Source: Fimbriosthenelais zetlandica
Lineage: Eukaryota
NCBI GenBank assembly: GCA_977030845.1
Contig: OZ365111.1
Span: forward strand, 43,028,001-43,092,000
Reading direction: 5' to 3'
Length of the DNA stretch: 64,000 nucleotides
Shown: positions 12,801 to 44,283 of the stretch, piece after piece
Numbering within the stretch: the first letter of the stretch is position 1
Layout: every line of letters begins with the position of its first letter
The notes under the pieces: generated by a model
Database searches by the model: none
Seen by the model: only the letters and a program-made list of their open reading frames with translations
Told to the model about the DNA's origin: nothing
Translations under genes and position numbers: made by a program

Positions 12801-15800
12801 TGGCAGTTTCCTAAGCAGAAATTTTGCGGCAAAGCTGAAATAATTGACCAAAAATCTGACACTAATACTTCTAGCCTGTCGCCTCAGATCAGACTCATGT
12901 AAGGGAATATTTTGAGTAAGATTAGCTTACTTTTTCTTCTTTTTCTGGAGTTTTTTAGCCATCATCATCTCCTCGTCCTCCTCATCGCTGCTGTCTGATT
13001 CTATCTTACTGACTGGTTCCTCATCACTGTCTAATGTCTCCTACAATCAAACAAGGTCACAAAACAAGATCAATGATTGATGTTCAAATATCTAATGAGT
13101 GGGATAATACTCCAATGTTTATTAAAAACAAATGAGAGAAAGAATATTAGTTTACTTCAAATCAGCAATTTTTTAACTATCTCTGGACGTGAAGGAAACC
13201 AGCTGTTGACACAGCAGTAAATTATGTTCTTATACATGCCTCTCACTATGGGCAGTGGGAGACATGACTGCCAATCACTCCACCACTGGAGCCACGGCAC
13301 CATGGATTTTTATAGCCAATGTCTGTACTATAGCAAGCAAGAAAATATGTCAATATATTATTTGATATAAGTAGAAGTCACGGTCATACCGATTCCATGG
13401 CAGGATCCGTCTCCTTCGCCTCTAAAACTTCAAATTCATCATCATCGTCATCGTCCGTGATCACTCGTCTCTTCTTCTTTTTCTTAATAATATTTTTTGG
13501 TGATGAGCTGGAACCAAAGTAACAAACTTATAGAGCATTTAATGTAAGTGATATATAAATTTAATTCAAATCTAGGACGCGTTTAAAAGTTGTAAAATTC
13601 AATTCAATTCGGTAGGAAGTTTTAATAAATAAAAGTTTAAATACCTTATACTTTGGTCATCGGCTGTGAACTTGCTCGAGCTGGAATCAAATAAAGAAAA
13701 GATGTTTTATATTCTTCATCTGCAAATCTATTCCTACCCTTTGGTCTCAACATAAGTGATATAATTTTTACGGGAAAGTTTCTGTACCTTTGACTTTGAC
13801 TTTGATCATCGCCTGTGAACTTGCCGGAGCAGAGACCCAGTAGTTCTGACATGTTTGTCTGTGTGGGTTGTGTGGATGGTAGACCTAGTGCTGTAGTGAC
13901 ATCACTAGATGACGGGGGTTTGTGTGTAGATGTAAACTGACCGGAGCACAGTCCCAGGATATCGTCTCCGGTACTCTGAGTGTCGTCCAGCAGCCTGTCT
14001 ATACCGCCGATACCAGCGAAATTCTTAGTCTTATCATCCGCTCCTGTAGAAGCAACAGAAAAGCCAGCAATCAATTACAGGGTATTTTTTTTACAAGGGA
14101 AAGTGCTTATAGTTTTTAGTAAATCTCTTTTATTTAATGACTGAAGAAATTTGGAGCTAGCTTTTACATGTCTCTCATTATAGAGAATACAGATAATGGG
14201 AGATATGGTTGGTCTTTTACATGGCTCTCACTACAGACAACGGGAGACATGGTTGGCCTTTTACATGGCTCTCACTACAGACAAATGCAGACATTGCATG
14301 CCTTTAACATGCCTCTCCCTAAACAGCTTTTATAGCCCAGATACCAGCCCTTGGAGAGAAGCAAAATTAGAAGATTGTTTAGTTAAATTAAATAGAGAAT
14401 TAGAAGTATTAGATTTAGATACTGACCTTGACTAAGTGAGAATTTGCCGCTACAGAGCCCGAGTAGCTCGGCCTCGTCCTCCCCGTCACTCTCCCCCTCC
14501 AGTAAGAGCTGTCTGCGGGCCGGCTTCTTAGCGCTACCCTCGTCCTTCAAAAAACTACAGCAAAGAAAAGGTATACCTCAATATGGTGCAACATACATAG
14601 AAAGTACTGAGTAGGCATATGGGTCCACCCCCATTCACTCGAGGTGAATTCAACCACCAATAATTTCATAAATTTCCTTTTGACCATTTGGTGGTTACAT
14701 AGTGAGATGGTCGCTTTAGTGAGTATTTCTTTAAAATTTTGTTCTGACCATTTAGTGGTCGGATAGTGAGATGGTCGCTTTAGTGAGTATTTCTTTAAAT
14801 TTTGTTCTGACCATTTAGTGGTCGGATAGTGAGATGGTCGCTTTAGTGGATATTTCTTTAACATTTGGTTCTGAGCATTTAGTGGTCGGATACTGAGATG
14901 GTCGCTTTAGTGAGTATTTCTTCAACATTTTGTCTGACCATTTAGTGGTCGGATAGTGAGCTGGTCGCTTTAATGAGGTGACTGTTGAGTCAGTGTGTCC
15001 TGTATTTTAACTAGTTATAATGTACCTACCCGTCCTCGTCCAGTAGGTGGGAGTAGGTTGTACTGTCGTTGAGATGGAAGTTGAAGCTTGTCATTGGTTT
15101 ATCTCTGGGTGTAGATTCAGCCTGGGAGCCGCGGGACGGCGAGCCCAGCAGATCCTGAGAGTCTTCAATAGGTAGAGGCATCTTACCCAGGCCCTGTCAA
15201 ACAAACAGCAGATAGTTAAAAAAATTTAAAAAAACATCCAGCAGATAGTAAGTTATAGTAGTAGTCGCATGGGTTTAACCAACAATTTTTCAGTTATATC
15301 ATGACAGTGCCTACTTGAGACAGTGAGTCCAATGCTGCCTTACCGCGATATCAAGTCGCAGGCACATGACATGATACCTAACCCAGTCATACTGACACCG
15401 GGTTGACCAGTCCTAGTAAGTACTGTCGTCTAGTACTGAGTGCCAAGCGAAGGAGCCACTAGTCCCAAACTATTAAACTTGAATCAAAATTGATTCCAAA
15501 TTTTAACTAATGGCTAATCTCAGAAATATCACAGCAAGGAGGGAACACGCTTTTGGTTTTCTGGCCTGCTCTTAACTCCGCCTATCACCTGGATCTTTTA
15601 CATGCCTCTCACCACAAAGAGTAGGAGGCATGGCTGGCCTTTCACAAGCCTCTCACCACAGATGTGACTCTTTACTTACCTTGGAGTATGTACTGTTGGT
15701 AGCCACGGATGACTTGGTAGAGGGGGTGAAGAGGTCGGGGGTGGTACAATTTTTTCTCCGGTGTTTGCGGATCGTGCCCTGACCAGCTGGGATGAGGGTA

Positions 15801-18800
15801 TCGTAGCTACTATCAGCATCACGTAGAAGCGACAGGTTAGGGTTTTCTGGGAAAAAAACCGAGTAATTGATAAAGAAGGTGATTGGTACAGAAGGGCCTG
15901 CTCTGCTAGGGATCTGTTAGTAGCCTCTCATCACGGTCGGAGGTATGGCTGGACTTTCACAGACAGTGGGAGACATAGCTGGATTTCACATGCCTCTCAC
16001 CATAGACACAGGGATTCTGTTTTCTGAATGCCTTTCGCCAGAGAGTGAGAGATATCGCTACCAAAGGGCAAATTTCAAAACCACTTTGGGAATTGAATCC
16101 ATGAACTACTGCCTTTGATTCAAACAAATATTTAACAAATAAATAAATAAAAATTCTAAAAACTTTAGATCAGAGATCTATCAAGGAAGTCCATACCTAG
16201 TTTGGGTGAGGTATCTTCGTTCTCTGTGTCATCTAGGTTCATCATAGATACGTCATCCTCTGTGTCATTTTTAACGTCATCAGCGTCGTTGAGGACATCA
16301 TCTAGTTCATTCCTCTGTTCTGATTTCTGACTCAGTTTCACCGTCTCTCCACTCAGCTGTTCAAACGGACGGTCACTCAACTCTGAAACATACCAGATCA
16401 TTTTTATTTTCCAACTGCAACATAGTTCATCATTTTCGATTTCATTATTTCTTATTACATGTATATGCACGCCTTATCAATTATCAATGTTTTCATTTAT
16501 TTACGATCAGTTTAGTTTTCCGTATCTAGTACTGATACTGATACTGATAGTACTGAGAAGACAATTGAGAGTAAATTGAAGATACAAACAAAAAGGCAAA
16601 TAAGCCGGGATATACAATCTAAACAGAGTTGAAAATGGCAGTAAACGATCAAATCTTTTGCAATCAAAATTACAAGACGACAGTAACAATTCAAATCTTT
16701 GGCAATCATGACAAGAAGAAGAAATTGAATGTAAAGTCTAAGAAAAACCACCCAAACCTTCAAGTATTAGGAAGAGCGTAGTATTGTCTTATAATACAAG
16801 AAATTAAGTGCGACTTATATTTGCCCTGGGCAAAGGTATTGGAAATAGATTTTTGTATTTCCAGGACATTGGCTATGAGAAGGGGCTTGATAAGTACCTA
16901 TACTCTCTTTGTTAGTTGACTGGGAAAGCGTGGGGGATGCACTGATAGCGTCGTCATCAAACAGTTGTAAAGTATTGGATTTCTGTAGCGCGACTTTGAG
17001 GTAGTCTGTGGCGGGCTTACGGGGCGCCTCGTCAGCGGTAGCGGTCTCTTCTGTTAGATGGGCAGCAAAGGGAAGCAACAATGAGGTGAAGAAAACATAT
17101 GTACCCCCACCACCGAGAAGTCGGAAGACTTGACATGCTAGTTCTTAACCGTTAAACACAGGCATTGGGATGAAATTGAGTGAAGCTGGAACGTTCCAAC
17201 GGACACCCACCCCCTTAAGTTAAAAAAGCCATGCAAGAATCTTAAACAAGGAGATTAAGTGAAGTATCATCTTATGTAGTGTACTACTTATCTCCTATAC
17301 ATATTCAGGGTTCCCACAAAAATTTTGAATTCGAACTACAAAACTCTTCCATGACTTTCTAAAACAATCAATATAGACATGAATAATTCCATAACTTATC
17401 CATAACTGCCCTTTTTTCTAGGATTTTTCAAAACTGTGGGAACCCTGATATTGAACTTTAATATGAAGACATTAGCAGGGTTCCAGATTCCCGGTCGCCC
17501 GACGGCCCGTGGCGACCTGAAAAGCCTAAGGGCGACCATCTATATAGAGATACTCGCCCTGCTGGCGACCATAATTTTGGAGTTTAACATTAGAAAACAA
17601 TATTAAAGACGACCAAGTGTTGGAAAGGGCGACCAAGGATTTATAGTAGGTCGCCCTGCTGGCGACCAAGGCATTTCAGGGAGTCTGGACCCCTGCATTA
17701 GGAGTGCGACTTACCGTCATCGTTGAACTGTAGGTGGAGGTTACTTTCTCCATCCTCATCCTCTAAATCTCCGTCCTCATCCTCAGCCTCGTCATTCACG
17801 AAGGGGTTATTCTGTCAAAATCACAAAAATAAAATATGAGGGAAAAAAATTCAAATTTAAAATACGTACTTAGAAATTTAAAAAATACTTATATTTTCTC
17901 GACTAAATTTGTTGCCTTTAACATTGAAGTAACGGACCAAGACAGGAGAAATAAGATGTTGGCTCAACAGCCTGCTCTTCTTCATTGGCAACAATTTTTG
18001 CCATATTTAGTAAGTGGGAGACTTGGCTGGCCTATATACATGCCTCTCAGCATGGTACATTATTTCATTCACACAGAAATAAAACCAATATTTACACAGT
18101 ACATAAACACACCTTCATTTCCCTCTCTTCAGTGGTGTATTCCTGAGCATCCATCTCTTCTTCCAACTCCTCTTCTTCTTCTATCTCTTCCTCCTCTTCC
18201 TCACCATCAGTATCACTCTGATCGGTTAGTTCTGCCTCTTCCTCCTCAAATCCCTCTTCATTGTCTAAAGCGAACATTTCACACCTTGCCTTCCTTGCCT
18301 CTTCTCTCTTCGCCTTCATCTTCTCTGCCAGAGACTCTTTCAAATTCAGCAGTTTGGCGCCTGGGATTGAAAGAGTATAATCGACATAAAAATATATTTA
18401 AAAATTTGATATTTTGTCATATACATGTATAAGTCAGGCAGGCCCTACATACATCAAACTCTTAAAGATGGAAGGAATTATTGTAAAAAAGGTGAAAATA
18501 AAATTAGCAAGAACGAATGTCCTATGGTAGTATAAGTAATAGTATTTAGAATCTTTCAAAGACGCTTAAAAGTTTTAAAAATAACAAGAAAGTTTGTAAA
18601 ATCGTTAAAAATACAAGAAACTTATATCATAATGACTAACAAGCTATAATGTTTACCGGGTTTGTTTAATTTTGGGTCGGCGGGGGCCTCTGCTCCGTCT
18701 AGGTGAACTACAAACTTCTTGAGTTGCAGCTCCTCACCGTCTTTCCCAGTTTTCACCTTTTCTACAGTGCTGCGGAAACAAATTTGAAACATTTTTAACT

Positions 18801-21800
18801 TTAAAGTTTAAACTCCGCTCGGTGATGGGTACAATGTACTATTACTGTTTACATGAGATTAAATCTCAAAATTAAAAAATCTAAATTCTAAAATTGTGAC
18901 CGTGGTCTTTGTTCTAAAATCTTTGATTTATAATAAATGATGAATTTCAACTTTAAAAAAATAAAAATATAAGAATATACATTGTAGATACACACCTTAT
19001 CTCTACATCCTGGGCCGCCTTTTTCTTCCTGTTTGCTGAATGTTTCATGAGTCGATCCATGAGGTCTCGGACTCCCGGTTTTGGTGTATTTTTTGGGACC
19101 TCATCATCATCTAAATCTATAAAAGCGTCGGGGCCTCCACTCAACCTCGGCTTGCCCTTGTCAAAACCTAACGCTGCTAACCGCGGGGTGAGCGCGGTCT
19201 GTCTCAGGGTCCCCACTTTCTGCCCAGTCACCGGCGTTTTCTCCACACTGTTCACTTTTTCTGAATTTATATCATCAGTTAGACTAATTTCCTTGTTTTT
19301 GGGAGTGTTTTCTGAGCTGTTTTCTTCCTCGGAGGTATGGCAGGAGGTGGATATGAAGCCGGAGTCCTGTTCTGGTTTGGGTTCGGCTGATTTTAATTTT
19401 TCATCCAGAGTTAGGGGGATACTGTCTGATTTGATGGCGTCTGTGGATAGGTTTTTAGCCTGGAGCCGCTCGCTGAGGGGGGTGTTAGTAATGTCTGGGA
19501 GGGTGTCCCCCTCTTCTCCCTCCTCCTCCATCATGGTGGAGGGGGTGGGGTGGTCGGTGGAGGTACTGGGGTTAGGACTAGGGTCACTGGTAGGTTTTGC
19601 CAGTAGAGGTGACGCAGAACTGGCTTCAGGTTTGGTTTTGTTCAGGGAAGGAGTGGTGACTAGAGATTGGTGGATGGATGGTGGTGTCTTCCAAGCCCTG
19701 CAAAAAAAATTGGAGAAAGAAAAGTTATTGGAGTGCAAATAAAGGATGATTGTGTGGTTGTTTAACGTTATTTTCAATAATTTCTCAGTTAGGATGGGTT
19801 GGGGGATGGATGGGTGGTTTAACTTACCCTTTGAGTTCCTTCAGACTTTCCTGTTTCTTCTTGGTTCTTTCTAATATGGCTGAGAGACCAAGCGGTGTAG
19901 GTTTGTGGTACGGGAGACGTATATCCGACTCTAAAAAATAAATATTAATTAACTTAATGGACATTTCATGGGCAAAACGACTGTTTTACAACATAGATGA
20001 TGCAAAGAAATCGAGTCTAAAAAGAAAGTAGAAAAGTTTAAACTGACCTCTGATAAGACGCTGAGTTTCAGCATGTATTTCCGTCATGGCGTCAGTTTTA
20101 GATTTTCGAGACTGTCCCTTCCTCACTCCACTCCCTCCTTCTCCGCTTCCCTTACCTCCCTTCTTGGCAGCTCCCTGTGAAAAAAAAAGTTAAATTATGT
20201 AACAGGAAGCCTAAATATATCCAAATTTCCCAACTTTTCCACAAATGTAATATACATTTCCCAAAATACATTCAATTGGCCTATCAGTACTTTGATAATT
20301 AATTAACTATATATACCAGATTAAGTTTTTGAATTTTAAACAAAGTAAAAGTCGTGACAAACCTTGGCTAGTTTTTTCCTGAGTGCTTCACTCAGTTCGC
20401 CTGGTTCATCATCGCTGCTGTCAGTGCCCCAGGCAGGAGTATCTTTGGGTGTCTCTCCCTCACTCTCACTGTCGCTGCTACTACTACTCTCATTCCCCTT
20501 ATTGCTGTCACCTCCTGAGGCCCCTGGTTAAATAGAAAATATTCAAATTTTTTAGAGTTTGCAGGAAAAATATCTGTAAATATATCTATTAAATACTTAA
20601 TGAAATACCCGTAACTAATAATAATGTTAATAATGCTAGTCTGGTCAAATTTTCCTTCTTATTTTTTAAATGAATATTTATAAAAAGACCAATGTTTGCA
20701 AGTCTCACCAGTTTTTTCTGGTGACTTTTTCTCCTCTGTCTCACTTTCTGGTCCACTGTCCAGGTTGTACCTTGTGGTTTGGTTCTTGTCAACCTTTTCA
20801 AATTCTGTATCTGAATCACTGTCCGAATTGATGATAATTTTCTTTTTCTGCAAGAGAAGATTTATCGATTTGTATAAGAGAAATGAGATATTTTAAGTGC
20901 ACGATTTAAGAACAACAGACTTGTTTCAATTGTCCAATTTTTTCTTCTTGTAAAGTGGAAATAATTTACCTTTTGGGAAAGAGGAGTTTTCTCTTTGATT
21001 TCTTCCTCATTTGAATCGTCACTGTCCTGGTCTTCTTTGTCTGAAATGTAATAGAATAATTATACCATACGATAGGTGGTTAAAAGTCTAGGAATCAACA
21101 CAGCTAAAATATGTAATCTGAGGTCCTTGGGAGTCTGGTATTCAAAATGCAAAGGCCTAATTTTTTATAGCTTTGATTACATGTATTTTAGTAAGATTAT
21201 AATATTTTGTAAAACTGACTCTTTTAGTAGAATTTTTTTCAAATAAAAGAAAAATGGGAGGGGAAACCAACCTGAATCTGATTGAGATTTTTTCTCTGGC
21301 TCATCATCTCTTTTCTCGTCCTCCTCGCTGTCCGAATCATCCACTATCTGTTGGCGCTTCTGTAAGTAAGGTCAGTCAGAAGATTACTTTTAAATGTGTT
21401 TTACAAGAATGCATGAAAACTAGAATAATTCTAAGATTAAAGTTAAATGAAACATTCCCAGGCAGAGTGGGGTTTAGATATAACTCACGTCTAGGCCCCC
21501 GCTTGTAGAAGGACCCTAGATCCGCCCTGTCTGTATTGAATGTAAAGTGTATACCTTTCTGTGCGTTTTGGTCCGGATCACCGGCTCATCTTCACTATCA
21601 TCCCCGCTGCCATCATCAGCAGCCATTGTACCCGCTGTCTTTAGTGACGATTCTGAACCTGGCGCCTGGGATAAATGAGATGTCGATTCACCAGATTCAG
21701 AAACCATCTGTCAACAAAAGAAAGTCATTATCAAGTACATGCACCAAGCAGTAAAACTTATTGTCAATATTGGCTTCATAGCCTTATTATTTGCTTTAGA

Positions 21801-23226: not shown

Positions 23227-23739
23227 AGCTTGACCCTTTCTACAATAATAAATGCTAAAATGTTTAAAAGCTTGATAGATTCTAGCAAAGGGTATGATAG
23301 GCCTAAGCTTTTTCATATCATTAATTAAACATTGCTGATTTAAATAACTTCATTAAAAGTTAAAATTGTTTCATTCAAATAATTCATTCATTATTTCCTA
23401 AGTCATGATCTTTAAAACCCAATAATCAATATAATTTCTGAAATTCTATTTACATTAATAGTCTGATTCATATAATTAATCAGTTAAAATTTGGTTAGTA
23501 ATTGTTTTAAAATCTGATTCACAACAATAATTAATACAATTTAAATTTTCTTAAAATTTCTGGCAATTACATACATGATCAAAACCGACCGTGTAAAATT
23601 CTAATCCAACTGTCTCATACAATACATTTGCTTAAATTGGTCCAAACCATTAGCCTGCCATACGAATAGAATGCATTTTGACTATTCATTATATAATTAT
23701 GCAGATTTCTTATGAGGTAATCGATGTATTTCTTAATAC

Positions 23740-23810
23740 ATTTGGTTCAAAATTCAATTGATTTCTTTTTTAGAATTTGGTTCAAAATTCAATTGATTTC
23801 TTTTTTAGAT
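23740..23810. repeat. About 36-bp tandem duplication just 3' of the MEIOSIN-like stop
   Basis: atttggttcaaaattcaattgatttcttttttag occurs twice. Confidence 0.85.
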
Positions 23811-23814
23811 TCGG

Positions 23815-26800
23815 TTACATTGGTTGTTCATCTGATTGGGGCAGAAGGTAGTCATTTATATAGATCTTGGCTTTGTCCCTGGAAAAGTTGAAAATTAGAA
23901 GAAAAAAGAAGAAGTTATATTGTAAGGTTAGATGAGAAAGTTCCAGGATTAGAAGCCTATAATTAAAAAATGAAAGGAAAAAGCATTAATTACCTGTAAG
24001 TTTGTTGCATATCAGGGTCTAGTTTTCTCCAAGCCTGGCCCATCAGCCGGCTAATGATAGAGGCGTGAGCTCCTGGGTTCTCACTAAAAGAGAGAAAACA
24101 AAGTCAGGGCATAGACATAGATTCTATGTCTATGGTCAGGGTCAGACCATTTATATATGATCGAGTAAATAGTAAGTAGGCCTAGTAGTATATTATAGAG
24201 ATGGACCATTGATCCTGGTATATGTGGGTTTCAAAAAATAGGAAAGTTAGTACGATCGAGGCGTCTGGAAAGTAGATGTGAAGATTTGAATGTAAGGGTA
24301 TATTTCACTAACGCTCTGTATTCTTTACGGTGGATGCGACTGTACATCATGAATCCATTCATCCAGGATATCTTCCTATAATCCACTTTGCCTTTAGATG
24401 TCACACTGAAATGGATAATATTTGAATTCTAAAATTAATTCCATTTCCTATTGGATATACCAATATGTTGGGGATTAAAAGTAACTATTACAAATTCGGA
24501 AAAGGTATGCCATAGTAAATATTGGTAGTTTTCCTGTGACCTGGAATATTTGTAGCTATCATTTAACCTTTTCTCAGCTGAGGGCTTGGGTCGATTCTTT
24601 TTATCGGCTGCTGCCTTCTGTCCACTTCCTATCCACCTATGTGAGGCATTCTCCATCTTTTCTTGCTTGACTGGTGACCGAGTTGTCATTTCCAGGGAGG
24701 AATCAATCAACAACTGAGAGAAGGGGTGGCTCAGGTTGGTACTAGAAGCTACAAAATAAAATATTTATGTAAAAAAAAAACTGTAAGAAAAGAAAACGGG
24801 CACAACTTAGAAGGTCAGATGCAAGAGCAAGAAAACGGATTTTTAAATGTAACTGGTGAATATAAGTTGAAGACAGAACTGTAAAAGAAATATGGTAACA
24901 ACTTATTGGAGTCTTGGATCACGTTTTTCAGCTTGGGACTGGTAGTGTTGGTGCTGATCGTCAGAGGGCGCCTGGGTGGTGGACAGTTGTTTTGCACAGG
25001 GCAGACAGCTCAAGTCCTCATCAACGGTAGGTCGAAATTCCTTATTCTATACACGCACAAATTAAATTTAGATTAAAGTAAAATTCAATTCTTAAAAACA
25101 ATTCTGTAAAGTAAAATCTTAACACGCAGGCCAGTGAATCCAGTGAAAGAATATGCATTATCAAAATATATCAATAGCGGTCAAAAGCATTGAAGTGGGG
25201 ACCTGTCTCTTTACTCATGTTGTCAATATTGAAATATATTAAATAATATAACTCACAGAGGGAGTTGAGGATGGAGTTTTCACATAAGAGTGCATCATTG
25301 ATATATCAGTATAGTTCTGCTCCGGGCTCTCACTCTCTGTCTTGATGGCAAATTCATCAAATGAAAAACCCTGAAATAAAGAGAACATGCAATTATATAC
25401 CATGGGAATTAATGGTTAAAAACCAATTAAAATATGCCTAAACTCAATGTAATTATTGGAATTTTTTTTATTGGAAGTTGACCTTTTGCAATGATGCTCT
25501 AACGATTTTATTTGGAATATTAAGATTCAATAGGATTAGGGTTACCTGGGTGGGGTGGGCAAGGTCATTAAGGACATCCGGTAGAAGGTCAGGCAGGTCA
25601 TACACGTGAGTGCACATGTGATCCAGGTTGAGGTCAGGTAAGATCATGTGATCTAACCAGGTCAAGTCCTCCAAGGGTTCCTCAGGTTCTGGTTCATAGG
25701 AAATAAACATAGAAAACAAAACAAAATGCCAAAATACAAATTAGAGACACAATAAAACCCTAACACAAGAATACCGTACCGTATATCACAAAATGCCGCA
25801 ATAGGCTGAACCCGTAAAAGGGGGAAATTATACACAATCAAAATATAATAGTTAATACCAAATATGCAATCACTACACTTAGGCAATGATCGATTGCAAC
25901 ATTGCCTTCTAAATTTAAGTCTACCATACTGGTATATCAAACTGAATCAGCAGTCAGTCTGGTTCTTTTTTTCACCTAACCTTTCACAATCCATTTCTAG
26001 TAAGACGATCAGAGCCCACCCTGCAACTTATCTATATCCCAGACGTACAAAAAACAGCCATATATATACCTTCAGGAATTAACAGTGAAAAGTTATTTGG
26101 TATGTTACATTGCTATCTAAAATCCAACATTAAAAAAAACATGTCTGGCCAGCTGTTATCGAGCTACAGTCGGCTCTAGGGGCTTTTCTATATTGATGTG
26201 GGACGAACTCGGGAGATTGGCCTGAATGGGAGACATAACCCGTCTAAAAATATGATAAAGCTTTTCAATTCAGAAGTTAGTTGACAGAAGGGTAGGGACA
26301 GGACAGTAAAAAAATAACACTCATCAAAGCTGAACAAACTTTATTTTGGAAGTTTTAAAGCACCAAGCTATTAGAGAATATTTCTGACATTAAATTCCGA
26401 TATCGCATGCTTCTATATTCTCCCAACTAAGAAATAAATACAAAAATACATACAAAAAATATATCACAATCTGTAAAATAAACTAATACTTGTGGTCTCA
26501 AATCTATCAAGGTGATTTCTGTGATATTTTAGTATTTGTAGTATTACAAAGGCAAAGAAAATATCATAACTGCGTTTAGTTATCATGCTTTGTTTCCTGA
26601 GCAGAGCGATACATTTCTCGAACTGGGAAGATGAAAACGTTTCCCATTGAACTTTTTTTTAACTTCAAACATCGGGCAAACATCGATGCTTTAAACACAA
26701 AGATACATCTCAGATATAACTCTCATGCAAACGATGCAAACTCTCATAATTCTCACAATTCTGAAACTGAAAGTAAAGAAAAATCACAGAAAAACTGTCA

Positions 26801-29743
26801 ACTCAAAATCCAGAATGTGAAAGATGCAAAATGCCATTGGCCCAACAAAAAATGCAATTAATCCAAATGTATGGAACATGAGGAAGAACTCCTTTGTTCG
26901 ATCAAGAGTGTACCTTGTAGTTTGACCAGTGGAAACTCTGAAGGAAGAGCTGATGCCTGATCAGGAGATAGGTGGGGTGGAGGGGGAGCAGGCAGGACTG
27001 GTAGAGGTACTGGTAGGTCTGGAGGAGGAGGAGCAGGGAGGATGGGAGTGTAGGATGACAGTAGTGATAGGACTAGATCCTTATCAGGGGGCTTCACAAC
27101 GGAGCTTGGTTTCCTGTAAGAATATAAATTAATTCTTTAATATTAACTATTCTATCACGGATGAGATATAAGTACACTTTATATATATATATACTGAACA
27201 TTCAACACTTGTTTGATAAAAACTTCAATACACACAAGTATTAAAATATGGAAAGTATCAAATCATTGTAGCCATAGATAATTTTGCAAATAGTTTACAT
27301 TAATAATTTATATTAACCCAACTTTTCACTAAACTTTCTCAATACAGAGGTTTAACTGTATTAGGAATTTTTGACAGACAAATATTGAACCGATTCCTTG
27401 TAATTTATCAAGTAATGGTAGTTCTTTCTAAGATGCTACTTCTATGGTGGCATAGTTACCTAGACTTGACCTTGTTTTTAGTGTTAGATTTGGAGGGATG
27501 TGTGACATTTGAATTGTGAGATTTTTCTGCCCACTCATTCTTCTTCTCCAAATGGGGTTTTAAGTATGGAGGTGACGTCTGAAAGAATCGACAAAATTAT
27601 ATTAAAAACATATAATCAGAGCTAAAATTTCAATGGTAAGCGCTTCATTCATTGGGATAAATTTGTCTGATGTCCTATGCAACAATTTACCTTGTGGTGA
27701 GTATCCTGGATCGGTTGGTGGTGGGTGGCCTTGGAGATACATTTCCATTCATCTGAAAAAAAAACCACAAAATAATCATGAATACTGAAAGAGATAAAAT
27801 GTTGACAATGATGGGAAAATACAAGGCAATTATTATAAAGATGGGCCTAAATAAAAATGTCTGCCAAAGCTCTTGACGAATCTCAAAACCTCTGTAAATG
27901 GACTTAGCTTTAGTGATGGCTCATTGCCATACCTACACGTTTCGGCTTACCGGCTTTTAATTAGTTTTTTTCTTAATAACTTACCAGCGTTTTTACAGAT
28001 GTGAGGGGAGAGGAAGAGGTGCTTGTAATCTAGAGTGACGCCGCTCTCATCACAAAGCTTCTTGACATTCTTTTCAAGATGACAGATATAATTTATGATG
28101 CGCTGAAGTTTCACAATCTGAAAATAGGACATTTTAAATTATTTCAATCACTCGCTTATTTTGTTCGTCATATGAAATATAAACATGAACATATCTTTAA
28201 TAGTAATAGTAGTACCCTGGATCTTTTTAATAGTAATTTTCCTGATTCGAGATAATTATAAAATTTAATGAAAATAAGCTGGTGCCTCTCACTTATCGTA
28301 CCTTTGTCTCCCTGTGATCGACGTCAAAACCTGGGATTCTCTGAGAGATTTCTTTGATAGAGGCGTTCAAACCATGGTGGCGATGTCTGGAAAAACATAA
28401 TTTCAAAAAGCAAATTGCTGTGCCGAAATGGAAAGTTTGGACAGAAGTTTCCAATTGGACTGATTTCTAATTTACATCAAAACAGGGGGATATCGAAGGA
28501 TAAAATAACGAAATTTAATGAAACAATCATTCAAAAATTCCATTATAGGCTGGTATTCGATAGTTGATTTAAATTTTTTTTTGGAGGAAGTTGAGATAAT
28601 TTTAGGTACCTTTCACTTTCCCTGTGTTGTTGCATGAGTCTGGTGAGCGTGCGTGGCGTCCTCTTGCGGCCGTGTCCGTACCTCTCCTGTAGAGCGCGGG
28701 AGACAGCAGGCGACCAGCCTAGAGGTGGATCACCTGCCTCATCCACCTCCACCTGAACATAGGAAACATAGTCAAATACATTCAAATCTACCGTATTTGG
28801 CGGACTATAAGCTGCGACTTTTGTATGAACTTTTATACAAAGCAACAGTTTATATATTTTAACATGAGCGGCCAGGGGGTGCGGTTTATAGTCAGGTGCG
28901 GTAGACAAATACGGTACTACCACCAACAATTATAGTAGAGTAGTATACTTAACTATTCTTGCTACAACATTTACAACCACCACCAACGACGAACCCCCAA
29001 TTTTGAAATTAATAAGTAGGGAAAGCGTTTGACAATCTTAACACCTCCTCAGACAACAGATCTTAGACACAATACTTTGCTAATGAACTTAGTAGTGGGG
29101 TCCCACAGGGACTGATCTTAGGCCCATGCATTACTCTGCCTAATTTTACAGACAGTAGGGCTTATATAGCTATTTTTTCCAGATACGCGACTGCGAAATG
29201 TCCATTATAAGGAGGCCTTACTGTAGCATCTTATATATTTCTGTCTATTATTATATAGTACAGTAACAGTGGTTTATTTGGCACCATCTGAAGACTATGA
29301 TTGTTACCGCGCCAGTTGGCTGTCTGCCCTCCCATATCATCCCATACCATATCTTAATGACCTATAGCATATTCATGTCATGCTAGGAAGCGCCTTAAGT
29401 AAAAGTATAGCATAAGATCATAGGTCTTGGGTCTAGTGGGTGCAGCCAGTCATAATCACAACATTTTCAAAATAATATTTTATATAAATTTAATCTAGTT
29501 CAGTTTTACTTAGCAAGATGTCTGAAATATATATTTCAAATCTGTATTTCATCTGTATACCTGTATTTAGAATCTGTATATAGAATGTGGCGATTAAAAT
29601 GCGGATTCTATGAGAAAATGTAATTAAAATGAAAAATTTACGAGTTAGCCCTATGGGTCGTGGGGATGATATAATTTAATTTATATCTGATTGGCAATGG
29701 GAATCAGGATATAACTGGAACGCACCTTAATCCCCACCTCCAT
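23815..29743 (-). CDS. MEIOSIN: MEIOSIN/BHMG1-like bHLH + HMG-box transcription factor, 14 coding exons, about 522-531 aa
   Basis: Phase-consistent GT-AG exons: 29726-29743 (MEVGIK, 5' end uncertain), 28610-28752, 28302-28386, 27985-28117, 27691-27752, 27460-27578, 26914-27113, 25546-25688, 25257-25370, 24923-25046 (weak donor gtgatc), 24568(or 24541)-24748, 24313-24405, 23994-24083, 23815-23878. bHLH: HRESERHRHHGLNASIKEISQRIPGFDVDHRETKIVKLQRIINYICHLEKNV. HMG box: WMNGFMMYSRIHRKEYRAENPGAHASIISRLMGQAWRKLDPDMQQTYRDKAK, which resembles the human MEIOSIN HMG as recalled (NGFIMFCRMNRKQYIR..PG..S....K.LAQLWR..Y..KA). The two-domain architecture is seen directly; orthology is inferred. Confidence 0.85.
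28791..28914. mobile_element. pogo/Tigger-type MITE with TA target-site duplication
   Basis: TA|CCGTATTTG...GACTATAAG...TTATAGTC...CAAATACGG|TA in an intron of the MEIOSIN-like gene. Confidence 0.7.
29022..29126 (+). mobile_element. Degenerate non-LTR (CR1/L2/RTE-like) reverse transcriptase fragment
   Basis: Encodes KAFDNL (29022-29039) and SGVPQGLILGP (29094-29126), both RT signature motifs. The spacing is shortened, implying a deletion. Confidence 0.5.
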
Positions 29744-32661
29744 TTATAATCCCATCCCAGGGGAAGGAAAAACTGACATCATAAAGCACACAGCCAATTA
29801 TCAGTAATAATACCTTTAATATTGAATATTGCTTAGGTTCCATTTTTACACACTGGCGGTGCAGCGAGGGGTGCTGGCGGTATGGGGGATACTCCCAACA
29901 CCCTGCATGCACCCCTCCACTAATTTAAACAGTGGTGGGAGAGGTGGAGGAGAGAGACAGAGAGTAGGTACTGGTCTATAGGTAGAGAACTGAATAGTCC
30001 ACTACTGGAGGTGGAAGGAGCAAGTGGTGTCACCAACCACTATATAGACGCTCACAGTTGGCACAGGTAGGTTCTTTATATATATAAACCCCAGTCTAAT
30101 ATATACACTGGAGGACTCACCTATACAGCCCTGGGTTACATGGGTAGTGCTCACTTATGCTATACACCTGTGCATATCATGGGTACATGGATTTAATATC
30201 AAACAGGTGCTGGACCCTATAGCTAAATAAGGTCCATATAGGGCCTGTTTCAAAATCAATTGGTCATAATAACACCGCCCCAAATAATGGAATTAAATGG
30301 TTTAATATTTTAATTGAATTTCCCAATTTTTCATTATATTGGCAGCCATAAGGTTCAACCCTAACTGTTGAGGGATTTAAGGTGCAGAGATAAGTTGTTG
30401 GAAACTTTGACTGAAGTATGTAAACAGTGTGGGATAGTGTAGTGATAGGCCTAGTAGATACCAATATTATTCATTCACAGATAATGTGAACAGTGATTCA
30501 TTCATTCTTTGATATCTTAACGTCAATTAATGTCATGTTTAGCTATTTATAATAATTAATATGCTTATAGACAGACACATGAGATCTTCAGCTGGTGAAA
30601 ACATTTATCTTTCATTTCAATATAATTTATGAGATAAAGATCTTATCAATTTCAGAAATTGACAGTAATAGGTCATAAATGAAATTATTTATAGCAAAAA
30701 AGAATAGTATGAAAATATTCTATTAACACAGAGACACTGCCTATTATAGTGACATCTTGAAATTTTAATTGAAAGATTCAGAACAAGTTTTATATTATGA
30801 GAAATTTCTGTTAAAATCTTCCCCCGTTTATAACATAATATCGAGACATGTAGACATCCAATTACTTGCGGAGGATTGCCTATTTATTGTCGCTTTCTAT
30901 CGGCTTCTTACCCTCCCCTCCCCACCCCATCTTTTCTTCCTGCCCACGCCCCCAGCCCGGGTATCGGACTACTCGTGTTATGGGGGTAATTCCCCGCCCC
31001 CTCGTGTTATGGGGGTTATCCTCTGACTCCGCGTGTTATTGGGATATTTTGGTTCTAGGTCATTGCTCTACAGTTGCTGATCAATAATAGGATTGTTTTT
31101 ATGGCTTGGATCATGGTTTCGATTGACGGTGCTCACTATATTATTCTACATTCCCAGAAAAAATCACGGCCTTCAACTGTCCAGAATCAGTATAATATTG
31201 ACAGAAAATGCCGCAACGATAGTTTAGAGGGGAATAAAAGGAGGGAGAGGGTGGGGGTACGGGGTTACTGCCTTTAAAGGCCCCAAAAATCATTTTAGCG
31301 ACAAAACAAAAGTTTGCCCCACCCCGGAATCTGACCAAGGCAGACATATTTATGATAGGAATTATTTTTATAGTGTACAGACATATTTGATAGTGTAGAG
31401 ATCTATTGTCGGGGGTATATTAGCTTTGGATCAATGGTTAATTAAGTGAGAGACTATATTTCCCCCACACTGCGTTCTCCATTAGTGTCTGGCTAGATAT
31501 CTGAAAAAATAAAGAGATTTGATGCGGCGACACGTTTAACTGGGATTGGGAATCTCTGATATCAATTTTTAATATCAGAAAAGAGTCAGCCAGATTAAAA
31601 ACTTGATTCCTTTAGGAGGTGTGACTCAATATTATGGATCACCAGTCTTGTCACAGGTGCCCTTTTCGGACATTTTACATGAATTTTTCTTCTTGAATTT
31701 AGATGATCATTTCCATATTTTATCAGTTTTGTTAGCTGAGTACCGTTTCTCCTGTGAAGCATCTTCATCAGATAAATCAGATAACAAAAGAGGCGGGGAA
31801 AGGTGGGTGGGGGTGGAGGGCTGCAGGAAGCCCTTCGTTAAATATTATCCCATATATCCAGGGTTTCGGTATTAATCACCATCCCCAATGACCATAATAA
31901 TATATGGAATAACAAAGATCCACAAAGAATTAAATCTGCAGGGTAGTACACCTGCATGTAATTTGACATGGGGAAATAACAGATAAATCCCCAAAAGTTA
32001 TTCAAAATCTTAAAGGTATACCTTTCACAATGTAAAAGCTTTCTTCTGTCTGTGTTTGTGTCTGGACACGGACCAGTTCCCCCATATGTAACAAACAATA
32101 TAATAGGGATCGAATAGACCTGGGTGAATAGAAGTGAGTCAATTGAAGCCGTCAACAACTGACAACTACAAATGCTTCTCGATTATCCCTCTGTGAAAAA
32201 CGATAGAAAACAGATAGTGGATTCTGTGGTGTGTAAGACAGAGCCCACAGAGGTAATTATACATCCGATTTCCATCAGATTTCTCACTTCGTTTAAAACC
32301 CAATAATGGACTTTGGTGAATATTTGGTTAAAGTCCAGTCAGGCAGCAATGTTTCGGCTATCGCATGCAGGTCGAGAAGGAAACACGCTATCCGCACACA
32401 ACTCGCACATTTCTCTAATGCTTCAGCCTCTCAATATGCCTCACACCACAGACAGTGGGAGGCAAAGGTTGTCTTTGGATATTCCAGTTAGCAGCACTGG
32501 ATATTCAAAACCTAATGCTGGTAATCTTAATAGTGAAAGGCCAAGTGACAAAATGTAAATCATTAGCAAGCGACAATTCTGTCTAAAATAGGTTTAGTGT
32601 AGCAAGTCACTTTATTCATGTAAAAAAAAAATTTAACTTCTAAAATCACCCATAAACTTAC

Positions 32662-32763: not shown

Positions 32764-33380
32764 CTGAAGGCCGCACATTTTTAATTTCTCAAAATTTATT
32801 GTTCTCATGCTTGTTGAAGCATTTTAAAACGTATGTTTATTCTTAAAATTTAAAAAATAATTGTGTTTGTTAAACAGCAGTACCTTACTAATTTGTATAC
32901 CCATACTAAAATACCACATTTAAAAAATTTAAATTGACAAAAAAATAGTACATGTATTTACTAATGTAAAATATTGAAGTAAACTATCTAGAACCAAGGC
33001 TAAATATAAGATCCTTAAGGTCTAAAAAGGAGACTAGACTTGAGCTGTTGGTGTCCCAATACCCATCCCAGCCAATCCCCTAAGAATGAATTTTAAACAA
33101 GTTCTGGAAACTTAGTTGTATACATGGCCATAAGTATCCCCAACACGTGTCAGGTATAGATCTACCGCAGCATAATATGGATATTTAATGGTGGGAGGGG
33201 AGGGGTACAGGATATAGTCGCTAATATTGATTGGGTCCATTCTCTCAGGCTTGTCCATGGAGCCTGAGGCTAGTAGTCCATGGAGTGCCTGGAGTAAGCT
33301 TCATCAGTATTTCATAGAGCGTCCCTATATTATATCTATGACCCCTCCATGCCCTCTATTGCCTCCCTTTCCCTCTATCT

Positions 33381-33466
33381 TCTCTCTCTCACCCTCCCTC
33401 TCTCTCTCTCTCATTCTCTCTCTCTCTCTCTCTGTAGCTCTCCCTCCCTCTCTCTCTCTCTCTCTA
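33381..33466. repeat. Imperfect (CT)n tract
   Basis: Visible dinucleotide run. Confidence 0.9.
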
Positions 33467-33802
33467 GCTCCCCCTGCCACTGAGATTCCTACATCATTCA
33501 GTGGTGTAATATGGGTATATATAGGTCTAGTGACCACTGTATCTATCCTATTATTTCATAATTTACCACAAGATAGGCTAATCCATCATGATACCCCATT
33601 TTCATAACTTACTACTTATACAGTCCTGCTTAATGTACATGCACATTTCTTTGGCTTCAACTTATTTATTCTGTGATTTTTCGGTAAAATGTGAACGGTT
33701 TTCGGCAAAGGCAGGTCGATTTCATACATATCCAGCTTAATAGAACAGAGAATACAAAAACATATATATAATGGCCAGAGAGTAACATCTATTATAGATA
33801 TA

Positions 33803-34506: not shown

Positions 34507-36117
34507 ATGGCCGAGTGTGGAACAGCTGATAGCATGGAGGGTATCACCCGATCACCTGATGGACTTGTATGTCTTTCCCCACACAGGTGAGCTACCATGT
34601 ATATAGTACTTATATAGGGGATCCACCCCTATACCCAGCAGGGAAGCAGCATGGTCCGATCATAATACATGTAGTCTGTACATTACAGTACAGTGCTGTG
34701 CTCAAATCCAAATTTAGGAGCTGTCCCCAGTCTAATTCGATAAACTATAGAATAAATTGAAATACATGTACATGTCTCAGATGATTTCCTGTGGTTTTTG
34801 CCTTTTAGATACATGTATTTTGATTGTTATTTTGATATTTTGATTTTGATATTTCGATTGTTTATCTAAGCAAAATTATGTCCTAAAACCTTTGCGCATA
34901 AGACCTTGTGCTGTAGGCTATTATTTATCTATAGCTCAAGACAATATGCACAACATTCTATCTCTGTTATCCATTTTATGGATGAAGTAGTATATGAAAA
35001 TGTGAACTAGAAATGACTAAATCTACCATATTGCTACTTTCTAACTTATTTTAAATGTATTGAATTCATATATTATCTTTATTGATAGCTAGATGAGAAT
35101 ATATTGAATACTGTGATGAAAATGACGACAATTAATGTAATTAATTTAATAATTAATTTTAAAATTTGTTTCAGGATTGACAGGTTGAAGAATGAGCTGG
35201 CGGAGCATGGAGTGGCCGTGGTACCGGGGATACTAACAGAATCTCAATGTGACGACTACATCACTGAGGTTCACCAGTGGTTGGCCAGGTTTGGTCAAAA
35301 CAGTTTCCCTGACAATGTGGGTTCCATCATCCACAAGTACAACATCGCCCACCTCACCCCAGCATGGCACGCTCGACTCCACGCAGTTCCTGTTTTCGAA
35401 GCTTTGTGGGGCACCGAAAAACTAGTGAGCAGCATAGATGGCATGGCCATTGGTCAACCTCCAGAGCTCGGGGCGGAACACTTCGACTCAGGGAAGGATC
35501 TAAATCTCAATTTACACCTGGATCAAGGACCCAAAAAGATAGGCCTCCATGCCTACCAAGGTGCGGTGTACCTGGAAGAAGCCCTGGAGGACGATTGGTG
35601 TTTTGTCGTTATGGATAAATCTCATGTTTATCATCCCGACTACTTCGCTCAACGGGGTCCCAAACCGCCCAGATCTGAATTTCTCAAGTTAACGCAGAAG
35701 GAAATTGACTGGTATATCCAACAGGGATGTCCTGTCCGGAGGATCGCTGTTCCCAAAGGTGGAATGGTGCTCTGGGATTCCAGGACCGTTCACTCCGGTG
35801 CGAGGCCTAAGTTGAACAGGGAGAATGCAGGACGGTGGAGGTATGTTGCGTTTGTTTGCATGGCACCTGCTATATGGGCTTCAATAGAAGAAATGGCCAT
35901 CAAAAGAGATGGATACCATCAACTCGGATGTTCAAGGCATTGGCCAGCACTAGGTTTCTCTCTGTTCCGTGAAAGAAATACGCCTGGATATCTAAAAGCT
36001 GTTCATGAACTGCCAGCAATTGCATTGACTGAAAAAGCCAGGCTTCTAGCTGGTGATTTAGAGTATGAAATAGATGGGAAACCTAAAGGTCCAGCAAAAC
36101 CTAAAATTCTTACTTAG
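34507..36117 (+). CDS. Phytanoyl-CoA dioxygenase (PhyH)-family Fe(II)/2-oxoglutarate dioxygenase, 2 coding exons, about 340 aa
   Basis: Exon 1 is 34507-34586 (MAECGTADSMEGITRSPDGLVCLSPH, donor AG|gtgagc, phase 2). Exon 2 is 35175-36117 (acceptor tgtttcag, phase 2). Motifs: N-terminal ELAEHGVAVVPGIL; HxD in LHLDQG; YQGAVYL; KSH (GSH-equivalent); VPKGGMVLWDSRTVH (distal His); RWRYVAFVCM (2OG-binding Arg strand). AATAAA near 36332. Confidence 0.88.

Positions 36118-44223: not shown

Positions 44224-44226
<3 letters not shown>

Positions 44227-44283
<57 letters not shown>
44227..44283. repeat. (CT)n microsatellite within a long pyrimidine tract (to about 44580)
   Basis: Visible run. Confidence 0.95.

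What the first reader, a model, noticed from the sequence alone, without database searches (positions are those of the whole stretch)
23815..29743. Invertebrate MEIOSIN-like gene whose bHLH keeps a DNA-binding basic region
Seen: 14 phase-consistent exons encode bHLH + low-complexity linker + HMG box. Established: this pairing defines MEIOSIN, which works with STRA8 to start meiosis in mammals and is usually discussed as a vertebrate factor. Seen: the basic segment HRESERHRHHGLN aligns with canonical bHLH H5, E9, R10, R12, L16 and N17, the residues that read CANNTG E-boxes. The mammalian protein, as recalled, has a degenerate basic region. Inference: this may be an ancestral meiotic-entry factor that binds E-boxes itself, possibly without STRA8. 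None of the short ORF-track fragments shows the two-domain architecture.
Basis: partly seen in the sequence, partly recalled or inferred. Interest (0 to 1): 0.82.

Follow-up and report, generated by a model that had tools for sequence, protein, structure and literature searches.

The report
Annelid MEIOSIN-like bHLH plus HMG gene
This animal (probably an annelid worm) has an intact gene joining a normal-looking E-box-type bHLH domain to a SOX-like HMG box; it resembles the vertebrate meiosis starter MEIOSIN, so it is a testable candidate for how meiosis was switched on before vertebrates, although similar genes are already annotated in molluscs.

Summary
The 14-exon minus-strand model (29743 to 23815, 522 aa, all AG/GT, phases consistent) was reproduced exactly. 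Exons 2-4 give a seamless bHLH (118 bits) and exons 12-14 a seamless HMG box (103.5 bits) against profiles of relatives. Exon 1 and exons 5-11 rest only on ORF and splice logic.

The gene belongs to a conserved lophotrochozoan family: about 35 annotated proteins from bivalves, gastropods, cephalopods, a chiton, Lingula and the annelids Owenia, Capitella and Lamellibrachia. They share the N-terminal bHLH, the C-terminal HMG box and the same five intron positions inside the domains.

The basic region (H5, R6, E9, R10, R12, H13, L16, N17) is invariant or nearly so across three phyla and aligns in register with Myc and NeuroD1.

Orthology to MEIOSIN is likely but not proven. Supporting it are the shared architecture, a conserved EML neighbour in five relatives (human EML2 lies in the BHMG1 neighbourhood), whole-protein language-model similarity and existing BHMG1 or Meiosin names in a scallop, an argonaut and sea anemones. 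Domain-level similarity does not single out mouse MEIOSIN. No vertebrate full-length sequence or RNA data could be obtained. Function is inferred.

The parts
29726..29743 (-). It is speculative, and the real 5' coding exon(s) are probably elsewhere upstream.
   Evidence: One search shows the ATG and the phase-0 donor. No relative gave a credible match upstream of exon 2, and relatives carry 50-160 aa before the bHLH. An alternative ATG exon with a phase-0 donor near 29846-29817 is visible in the sequence.
28610..28752 (-). Exon 2: N-terminal flank and the first half of the basic region, ending ...HRESE-R(AG|).
   Evidence: The relatives' alignments end at 28609/28606. The intron position is shared with Lingula, Pecten, Patella and Octopus and with Lamellibrachia-like contig L009.
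28302..28386 (-). Exon 3: rest of the basic region, helix 1 and the loop (HRHHGLNASIKEISQRIPGFDVDHRETK).
27985..28117 (-). Exon 4: helix 2 and a conserved tail (IVKLQRIINYICHLE...LDYKHLFLSPH).
   Evidence: Used as a phmmer query, it found the relatives.
28365..28626 (-). Basic region HRESERHRHHGLN (aa 49-61), split by intron 2.
24568..27752 (-). Exons 5-11 (27752-27691, 27578-27460, 27113-26914, 25688-25546, 25370-25257, 25046-24923, 24748-24568). They encode a Pro/Ser/Leu/Lys-rich linker of about 330 aa with an acidic block in exon 8. This is the predicted, least certain part.
   Evidence: open frames, AG/GT, phases; composition. No credible match in relatives. The chance control was not discriminating. 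Linker length matches relatives.
24313..24405 (-). Exon 12: start of the HMG box (KVDYRKISWMNGFMMYSRIHRKEYRA).
23994..24083 (-). Exon 13: HMG helix 2 and the start of helix 3.
   Evidence: Pfam HMG_box, 19.2 bits on this exon alone.
23815..23878 (-). Exon 14: end of HMG helix 3, a short tail and the TAA stop.
   Evidence: The same intron position occurs in Lingula, Pecten, Patella and Octopus.

Best explanation
The locus is an intact protein-coding gene for a transcription factor with two DNA-binding domains. It is the copy, in this probable annelid, of a family conserved across Lophotrochozoa, and that family is most likely the counterpart of vertebrate MEIOSIN (BHMG1).

Proposed mechanism (inferred): the helix-loop-helix dimerises, with itself or with an E-protein. 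The intact basic helix (H5, E9, R10, R12) reads an E-box-like CANNTG half-site in the major groove. The C-terminal SOX-like HMG box keeps the N-x-F-M wedge and binds and bends the minor groove nearby. The long disordered linker carries activation or partner-binding segments. The expected site of action is the gonad or germ line, possibly at entry into meiosis.

Shown here: gene structure, domain identity, family membership, constraint on the basic region, conserved introns, the conserved EML neighbour in relatives, and the degenerate basic region of mouse MEIOSIN.

Inferred: orthology to MEIOSIN (about 0.65), E-box binding (about 0.6) and a meiotic-entry function (about 0.4).
For: - Gene model and seamless domains.
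- Exon borders match relatives and intron positions are conserved.
- About 35 relatives carry a C-terminal HMG box and the N-terminal bHLH motif. Generic Pfam HLH passes its cut-off in only some of the full-length proteins, but all 24 bHLH segments in alignment A2 match it.
- One oyster transcript contig (2349 bp, run SRR14492791) has an uninterrupted 590-aa ORF with both domains, so the two domains are on one mRNA in a relative.
- A close relative's genomic contig encodes the bHLH without the two introns, colinear with my splice product.
- R6, E9, R10, R12, H13 and L16 are invariant, and H5 and N17 are at least 90% conserved, in 24 sequences from three phyla.
- The register with Myc and NeuroD1 is confirmed.
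- The AlphaFold model of the closest relative's bHLH shows one continuous basic-plus-helix-1 helix and helix 2, with mean pLDDT 85.
- The HMG profile is nearest SOX/SRY among solved structures and keeps the N-x-F-M motif.
- Link to MEIOSIN: same domain order and positions as mouse MEIOSIN. For the Lingula member, the best whole-protein language-model hit outside its own cluster is 'meiosis initiator protein' of chordates (0.89, 185 of 256 features), ahead of STRA8, HBP1 and BBX.
- Neighbourhood: an EML gene lies head-to-head immediately upstream in Lingula, Pecten, Patella, Saccostrea and Haliotis. In human, EML2 lies within the same 500-kb interval as FBXO46, SIX5 and DMPK (PMC5897035), and BHMG1 sits between FBXO46 and SIX5 (PMC4863877).
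- A scallop gene named BHMG1 is a male-gonad hub gene (PMC6708199).
Against: - No vertebrate, cnidarian or deuterostome invertebrate sequence was retrieved by any of the three homolog searches, so no tree could be made.
- Domain-level tests do not single out MEIOSIN. The Owenia HMG box is 35% identical to mouse MEIOSIN, against 38-40% to SOX14/21 and 33% to HBP1.
- The bHLH fold search lists neurogenin, NeuroD, USF and Myc, not MEIOSIN.
- The family bHLH profile gives mouse MEIOSIN 12.1 bits and Myc 26.6. For the HLH alone the scores are 11.2 and 17.5.
- Domain-only language-model searches are non-specific, so the whole-protein similarity may only reflect shared architecture.
- No expression data exist for this species.
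- Site 13 is His, not the Arg of CACGTG binders, so the exact target cannot be predicted.
Confidence: 0.6

Rival explanations
1. Convergent architecture. A lophotrochozoan-specific transcription factor family joined a generic E-box bHLH to a SOX-like HMG box independently of vertebrate MEIOSIN. Its role, for example sex differentiation or spermatogenesis, need not be meiotic entry.
For: Neither domain is specifically closest to mouse MEIOSIN. Domain-only feature searches are generic. All sequence searches stayed inside Lophotrochozoa. UniRef names many members 'Sex-determining region Y protein'.
Against: The domain order and positions are the same as in mouse MEIOSIN. MEIOSIN is the best whole-protein look-alike outside the family. 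The tight EML neighbour in five relatives, together with EML2 in the human BHMG1 neighbourhood, would be an unlikely coincidence; I estimate roughly 0.2% for any of six human EML genes to fall within 500 kb. Other annotators place scallop, argonaut and anemone genes with BHMG1/Meiosin.
Confidence: 0.25
2. Pro-orthologue of both MEIOSIN and STRA8. A single ancestral bHLH-HMG gene, working as a homodimer, duplicated in the vertebrate stem into MEIOSIN and STRA8, and both copies then lost E-box reading.
For: STRA8 is described with a bHLH and an HMG-like domain. STRA8 clusters are the next look-alikes after MEIOSIN for the Lingula protein (0.75). Both mouse proteins lack the E-box determinants.
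Against: None of the 24 family bHLH domains matches Pfam bHLH_STRA8, while all match the generic HLH family. Mouse STRA8 scores 0.3 bits against the family bHLH profile. From my own memory (unchecked), human STRA8 on 7q33 has no EML paralogue beside it.
Confidence: 0.1
3. Gene-model artefact. A bHLH gene (28.7-28.0 kb) and a separate HMG gene (24.4-23.8 kb) lie side by side, and the linker exons are chance open frames.
For: Exons 5-11 have no homology or RNA support, and permissive AG/GT chaining finds equally long chains elsewhere in the window. The Capitella and Lamellibrachia database models hold only the bHLH part.
Against: About 30 independent annotations in three phyla join both domains, with a similar linker length. 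An oyster transcript contig carries both domains in one uninterrupted ORF. In the window both parts are on the same strand and in the same order as in relatives, 3.6 kb apart. Most linker exons have good polypyrimidine-YAG acceptors and GTRAG-like donors.
Confidence: 0.04

Closest known systems
Vertebrate MEIOSIN (BHMG1; mouse Gm4969, 589 aa)
   Same: Both have an N-terminal bHLH, a long disordered middle and an HMG box close to the C terminus. Both have an EML-family gene in the neighbourhood. Human BHMG1 and the scallop gene given this name are testis or male-gonad expressed.
   Different: The basic region here is canonical (H5, E9, R10, R12). The mouse one reads HRARSPSPTDRKDKK, with two prolines and no E-R-x-R. 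Sequence similarity is low: the HMG box is 35% identical and the bHLH scores 12 bits. In mouse the bHLH mainly mediates binding to STRA8, and MEIOSIN keeps activity without it. No STRA8 partner is known for this family.
Annotated lophotrochozoan bHLH-HMG genes (Lingula LOC106162714, Pecten LOC117323468, Argonauta 'BHMG1-1', Owenia, Capitella CAPTEDRAFT_193552, Lamellibrachia LSAT2_001658; by name also scallop LOC110441893)
   Same: This is the same family. The domains, the invariant basic-region residues and five intron positions are shared.
   Different: The window protein and other annelids lack the K-x-SSPTIDSTTD and VPYIWKFH linker motifs of molluscs and Lingula. Its HMG box has Thr where nearly all others have Pro in Q-x-P-Y. 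The EML gene is not an immediate neighbour inside the window.
STRA8
   Same: It is a germ-line factor described with an HLH and an HMG-like region, and it is the partner of MEIOSIN.
   Different: The family has no match to Pfam bHLH_STRA8. Mouse STRA8 scores 0.3 bits against the family profile. STRA8 has no canonical HMG box and lacks the E-box determinants.
SOX/SRY HMG boxes and Myc/NeuroD-type bHLH domains
   Same: The HMG profile's best solved matches are SRY, SOX5 and SOX2 (E 1e-18 to 1e-14). The bHLH aligns in register with NeuroD1 (ERNRMHGLN) and Myc.
   Different: No SOX protein has a bHLH, and no Myc or NeuroD protein has an HMG box. HMG identity to SOX is only 38-40%, and the signature is SWMNGFMMF rather than RPMNAFMVW.

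Membership tests
MEIOSIN / BHMG1 | One polypeptide with an N-terminal bHLH and a C-terminal HMG box | tested here: met
   for the window. for relatives. Mouse layout from PMC13637641.
MEIOSIN / BHMG1 | HMG box groups with the MEIOSIN HMG box rather than with SOX, TCF, HBP1 or BBX | tested here: inconclusive
   Foldseek gives mouse MEIOSIN 35% identity (rank 24), SOX14/21 38-40% and HBP1 33%, all at E about 1e-3. No vertebrate sequence was available for a tree.
MEIOSIN / BHMG1 | bHLH groups with the MEIOSIN bHLH | tested here: inconclusive
   Only the mouse fragment from a published figure was available. Against the family profile it scores 12.1 bits, Myc 26.6, MyoD 9.0 and STRA8 0.3. For the HLH alone the scores are 11.2 and 17.5. 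MEIOSIN is not in the top 30 fold matches.
MEIOSIN / BHMG1 | Conserved neighbourhood (human: EML2 ... FBXO46 - BHMG1 - SIX5 - DMPK) | tested here: inconclusive
   EML is head-to-head upstream in 5 of 7 relatives examined. For this genome there is only an unchecked note of an EML exon 15.6 kb past the window. No EML exon lies inside the window.
MEIOSIN / BHMG1 | Germ-cell expression at the mitosis-to-meiosis switch | not testable with these tools
   No sequencing run was listed. The only indirect evidence is the male-gonad hub gene named BHMG1 in a scallop.
MEIOSIN / BHMG1 | bHLH-dependent complex with STRA8 | not testable with these tools
   The rest of the genome cannot be searched, and there is no interaction data.
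E-box-binding bHLH (Pfam PF00010 with an intact basic region) | Glu9 and Arg10/Arg12 (plus His5 or Arg8) on a helix continuous with helix 1 | tested here: met
   register; continuous helix, residues 7-36 of the modelled segment. All 24 family members match PF00010.
E-box-binding bHLH (Pfam PF00010 with an intact basic region) | Measured binding to CANNTG | not testable with these tools
   This needs EMSA, SELEX or DAP-seq.
STRA8 | STRA8-type bHLH (Pfam PF23175) | tested here: not met
   0 of 24 family bHLH domains match, even at E up to 10. Mouse STRA8 scores 0.3 bits against the family profile.
SOX | HMG box at least about 50% identical to SRY/SOX, with the RPMNAFMVW signature and no bHLH | tested here: not met
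   Identity to SOX14/21 is 38-40%. The signature is SWMNGFMMF. A bHLH is present.

The most novel reading that the evidence does not exclude
The last common ancestor of bilaterians already had a MEIOSIN gene, paired head-to-head with EML. It encoded a self-sufficient factor with two working DNA-reading domains: an E-box-type bHLH and a sequence-specific HMG box. In vertebrates the basic region decayed once the bHLH was taken over for binding STRA8. Lophotrochozoans would then preserve the ancestral, STRA8-independent way of switching on meiosis.
Probability: 0.35. Interest if true: 0.78.

Novelty: new member of a known kind. Interest (0 to 1): 0.55.

Why it matters
How animals outside the vertebrates decide to enter meiosis is largely unknown. 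The MEIOSIN-STRA8 switch has been analysed only within vertebrates. [quoted passage not shown]

A conserved invertebrate family would give that question a concrete, testable candidate in tractable animals such as oysters, scallops, Platynereis, Capitella and Owenia. The family has the same architecture, a possibly conserved genomic neighbour and gonad expression in at least one species.

The intact basic region gives a sharp prediction. The invertebrate protein should bind E-box-like sites through its own bHLH, whereas mouse MEIOSIN should not.

The value is tempered. These genes are already present, mostly unnamed, in public annotation, and orthology and function are not yet shown.

Tried and rejected
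- RNA evidence: two searches for sequencing runs, one on an 0.8-kb stretch covering exons 2-4 and one on the whole gene, listed none. Read laying was therefore never used.
- Pfam on single exons: too short. Only exon 13 gave a sub-threshold HMG_box hit.
The queries were Lingula full length, the Argopecten HMG region and a 42-row family profile. The single exhaustive phmmer job had to use one exon and found only close relatives.
- Fold searches against Swiss-Prot models: not discriminating. Every HMG box matched at E about 1e-3, and the bHLH model matched generic bHLHs at E of 0.1 or more.
- Domain-only language-model searches: generic hits only.
- EML exons inside the window: tblastx with the upstream 9-10 kb of three relatives gave only low-complexity matches.
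- Linker exons in two annelid-like contigs: only the bHLH exons fell within the fetched DNA.
- Chance test of phase-consistent exon chaining: the real region (2011 nt) beat 199 of 200 Markov shuffles but not other window chunks (mean 1771, maximum 2308). Phase consistency alone was therefore rejected as evidence.
- The idea that the bHLH is STRA8-type was rejected.
- The idea that the protein is a SOX family member was rejected.
- A literature search for invertebrate MEIOSIN studies found no dedicated paper. BHMG1 and EML2 never co-occur in one paper, so the human linkage was pieced together from two papers.

Full report
**1. What is in the sequence.**
Reading the minus strand of 23500-30100, I rebuilt the gene. 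It has 14 exons from an ATG at 29743 to a TAA ending at 23815, giving 1569 nt and 522 aa. Every intron is GT..AG and the phases are consistent.

Exons 2-4 encode a bHLH whose basic segment HRESERHRHHGLN (aa 49-61) is split by a phase-2 intron after Arg10. Exons 12-14 encode an HMG box. Exons 5-11 encode a linker of about 330 aa rich in Pro, Ser, Leu and Lys.

Single exons are too short for Pfam. Only exon 13 gave a sub-threshold HMG_box hit.

**2. Relatives.**
A phmmer search of 1.84 billion representatives with exon 4 found these relatives:
- a Lamellibrachia satsuma protein;
- a Capitella teleta protein;
- several unnamed contig ORFs;
- Lingula anatina LOC106162714, a 762-aa protein carrying both a bHLH and an HMG box.

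Three further searches gathered about 35 proteins. They come from bivalves, gastropods, cephalopods, a chiton, Lingula and the annelid Owenia.
- All have the bHLH motif near the N terminus. Nearly all have an HMG box near the C terminus, 340-760 residues further on; two models lack it.
- Pfam confirms HMG_box in the Lingula and scallop proteins scanned. Generic HLH passes its cut-off in some members and is just under it in others.
- Most are called 'uncharacterized'. UniRef calls many 'Sex-determining region Y protein'. [quoted passage not shown]

The best matches to the window are annelid sequences, so the organism is probably an annelid. This is an inference.

**3. Support for the gene model.**
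- Profiles built from the relatives' domains score the spliced window protein at 118.4 bits (bHLH, aa 35-112) and 103.5 bits (HMG, aa 445-510). Neither alignment has a gap at an exon junction.
- tblastn of ten relatives onto the window stops exactly at my borders for exons 2, 3, 4, 12 and 13.
- Lingula, Pecten, Patella and Octopus genes have introns at the same five places inside the two domains.
- A close relative's genomic contig (L006) encodes the bHLH from Arg6 onward in one exon, colinear with my splice product.
- An oyster contig of 2349 bp from run SRR14492791 carries an uninterrupted 590-aa ORF with both domains, so in a relative one mRNA holds both.

Weak points:
- Exon 1 has no support, and the N terminus is probably incomplete.
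- Exons 5-11 have no homology support.
- A control showed that phase-consistent AG/GT chains of similar length can be found elsewhere in the window.
- The exon 10 acceptor and donor and the exon 11 donor are poor.
- No sequencing run was listed for this DNA.

**4. The basic region.**
In an alignment of 24 family members from Annelida, Brachiopoda and Mollusca, R6, E9, R10, R12, H13 and L16 are invariant. H5 and N17 are present in at least 90%.

A profile search of PDB sequences aligns this stretch in register with NeuroD1 (ERNRMHGLN) and Myc (H-N-V-L-E-R-Q-R-R). The family's H5, E9, R10 and R12 fall on the residues that, from established structural work on Max, Myc, MyoD and E47, contact the E-box bases and backbone. 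Site 13 is His where Myc/Max-type proteins have Arg.

An AlphaFold model of the closest relative's domain shows the basic region as one helix with helix 1, followed by helix 2. Mean pLDDT is 85. All 24 domains match Pfam HLH and none matches bHLH_STRA8.

**5. The mammalian comparison.**
Fig S1 of PMC7810945, held as text, prints mouse MEIOSIN residues 14-68 aligned with other bHLH proteins. Before helix 1 it reads HRARSPSPTDRKDKK. There is no Glu-Arg-x-Arg, and there are two prolines.

The family profile aligns mouse MEIOSIN only from helix 1 onward, at 12.1 bits.

The same paper states that STRA8 lacks the E-box determinants. In mouse the bHLH of MEIOSIN mediates binding to STRA8, and MEIOSIN lacking it keeps partial activity.

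**6. Is it MEIOSIN?**
Evidence for:
- Mouse MEIOSIN has the same layout: bHLH at aa 10-70 and HMG at about 484-543 of 589 aa.
- For the Lingula protein, the best whole-protein language-model look-alike outside its own cluster is the chordate 'meiosis initiator protein' cluster (0.89, 185 of 256 features). It ranks ahead of STRA8 (0.75), HBP1 and BBX.
- Others have already named scallop, argonaut and anemone genes BHMG1 or Meiosin.
- There is a neighbourhood signal, which I did not expect. An EML gene (HELP plus EML beta-propeller, 836-879 aa) lies head-to-head upstream of the bHLH-HMG gene, about 0.3-0.8 kb away in Lingula, Pecten, Patella and Haliotis and 5.7 kb away in Saccostrea. It is not seen in Octopus or Owenia.
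- In human, EML2, FBXO46, SIX5 and DMPK all lie within 250 kb of one SNP in QPCTL (PMC5897035). BHMG1 lies between FBXO46 and SIX5 (PMC4863877).
- An earlier unchecked note of this scan places an EML exon 15.6 kb beyond this window's end, which is on the 5' side of the gene.

Evidence against, or neutral:
- The Owenia HMG model is 35% identical to mouse MEIOSIN but 38-40% to SOX14/21.
- The bHLH fold search returns generic bHLH proteins.
- The bHLH profile scores Myc above mouse MEIOSIN, also for the HLH alone.
- Domain-only language-model searches are generic.
- No vertebrate full-length sequence could be fetched, so no trees were made.

I put orthology, or pro-orthology, at about 0.65.

**7. 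Function.**
Nothing here measures function. The scallop gene named BHMG1 is a hub of a module far more highly expressed in male than in female gonads. Human BHMG1 is testis-specific.

The most likely mechanism is a dimeric factor that reads an E-box-like site with its basic helix and a nearby site with its SOX-like HMG box, acting in the germ line. Independence from STRA8 is plausible but untested, because the rest of the genome could not be searched.

**8. Novelty.**
The gene is a new (annelid) member of a family already present in public annotation, which is probably the invertebrate counterpart of MEIOSIN. I found no paper that analyses invertebrate MEIOSIN or notes the intact basic region or the EML pairing. 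The 2026 Genes & Development study explicitly did not look beyond vertebrates.

The finding is therefore moderately interesting. The architecture itself is ordinary, but the family offers a clear, testable handle on an open question.

Noticed in passing
L001:1-9284, L002:1-9561, L003:1-9203, L010:1-4252, L011:1-9670 (all minus strand): An EML-family gene (HELP plus EML beta-propeller, 836-879 aa) is the divergent, head-to-head upstream neighbour of the bHLH-HMG gene in Lingula, Pecten, Patella, Saccostrea and Haliotis. This suggests an old gene pair, perhaps with a shared promoter. Human EML2 lies in the BHMG1 neighbourhood.
   Followed up: partly
L002:26137-30857 and L003:22209-28521 (minus strand): In Pecten and Patella the downstream neighbour is the same kind of gene (ZNF380_CC domain, with weak zf-C2H2_jaz hits in Pecten), so the microsynteny extends to three genes in molluscs.
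   Followed up: no
L006:1-649: A close relative's genomic contig has an identical RTPRTLTRLMQQHR. It has an intron between His5 and Arg6 of the basic region and lacks the two bHLH introns of the window gene. This is intron gain, loss or sliding within a short evolutionary distance.
   Followed up: partly
window 23740-23816: A 35-bp unit is repeated 2.2 times (95% match) directly after the stop codon, in the presumed 3' UTR.
   Followed up: no
window ~10000-20000, minus strand (e.g. 13646-14074, 18092-18343, 18953-19777): The downstream neighbour has large acidic exons and two copies of a motif like L-C-S-G-Q/K-F. From memory this resembles the Chk1-binding repeats of Claspin. Pfam gave no hit, so this is only a lead.
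   Followed up: partly
window 35104-36117, plus strand: An intronless 337-codon ORF has a PhyH (phytanoyl-CoA dioxygenase) domain (E 5.5e-6). It lies between the bHLH-HMG gene and the reported EML gene. Its origin was not examined.
   Followed up: partly
window 28790-28915 (intron 1 of the model): A short element is bounded by an inverted repeat (accgtatttg ... caaatacggt). It looks like a small transposon or SINE-like insertion.
   Followed up: no
Relatives P0010, P0012, P0014, P0017, P0026, P0037 (linker): Two short linker motifs, K-x-SSPTIDSTTD and VPYIWKFH, are conserved between molluscs and Lingula but are not detectable in the window protein or other annelids. They may be docking or phosphorylation sites.
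   Followed up: no
window 33227-33607 and 44108-44560: Long CT-rich simple repeats translate as runs of SLSLSL and create spurious ORFs.
   Followed up: no
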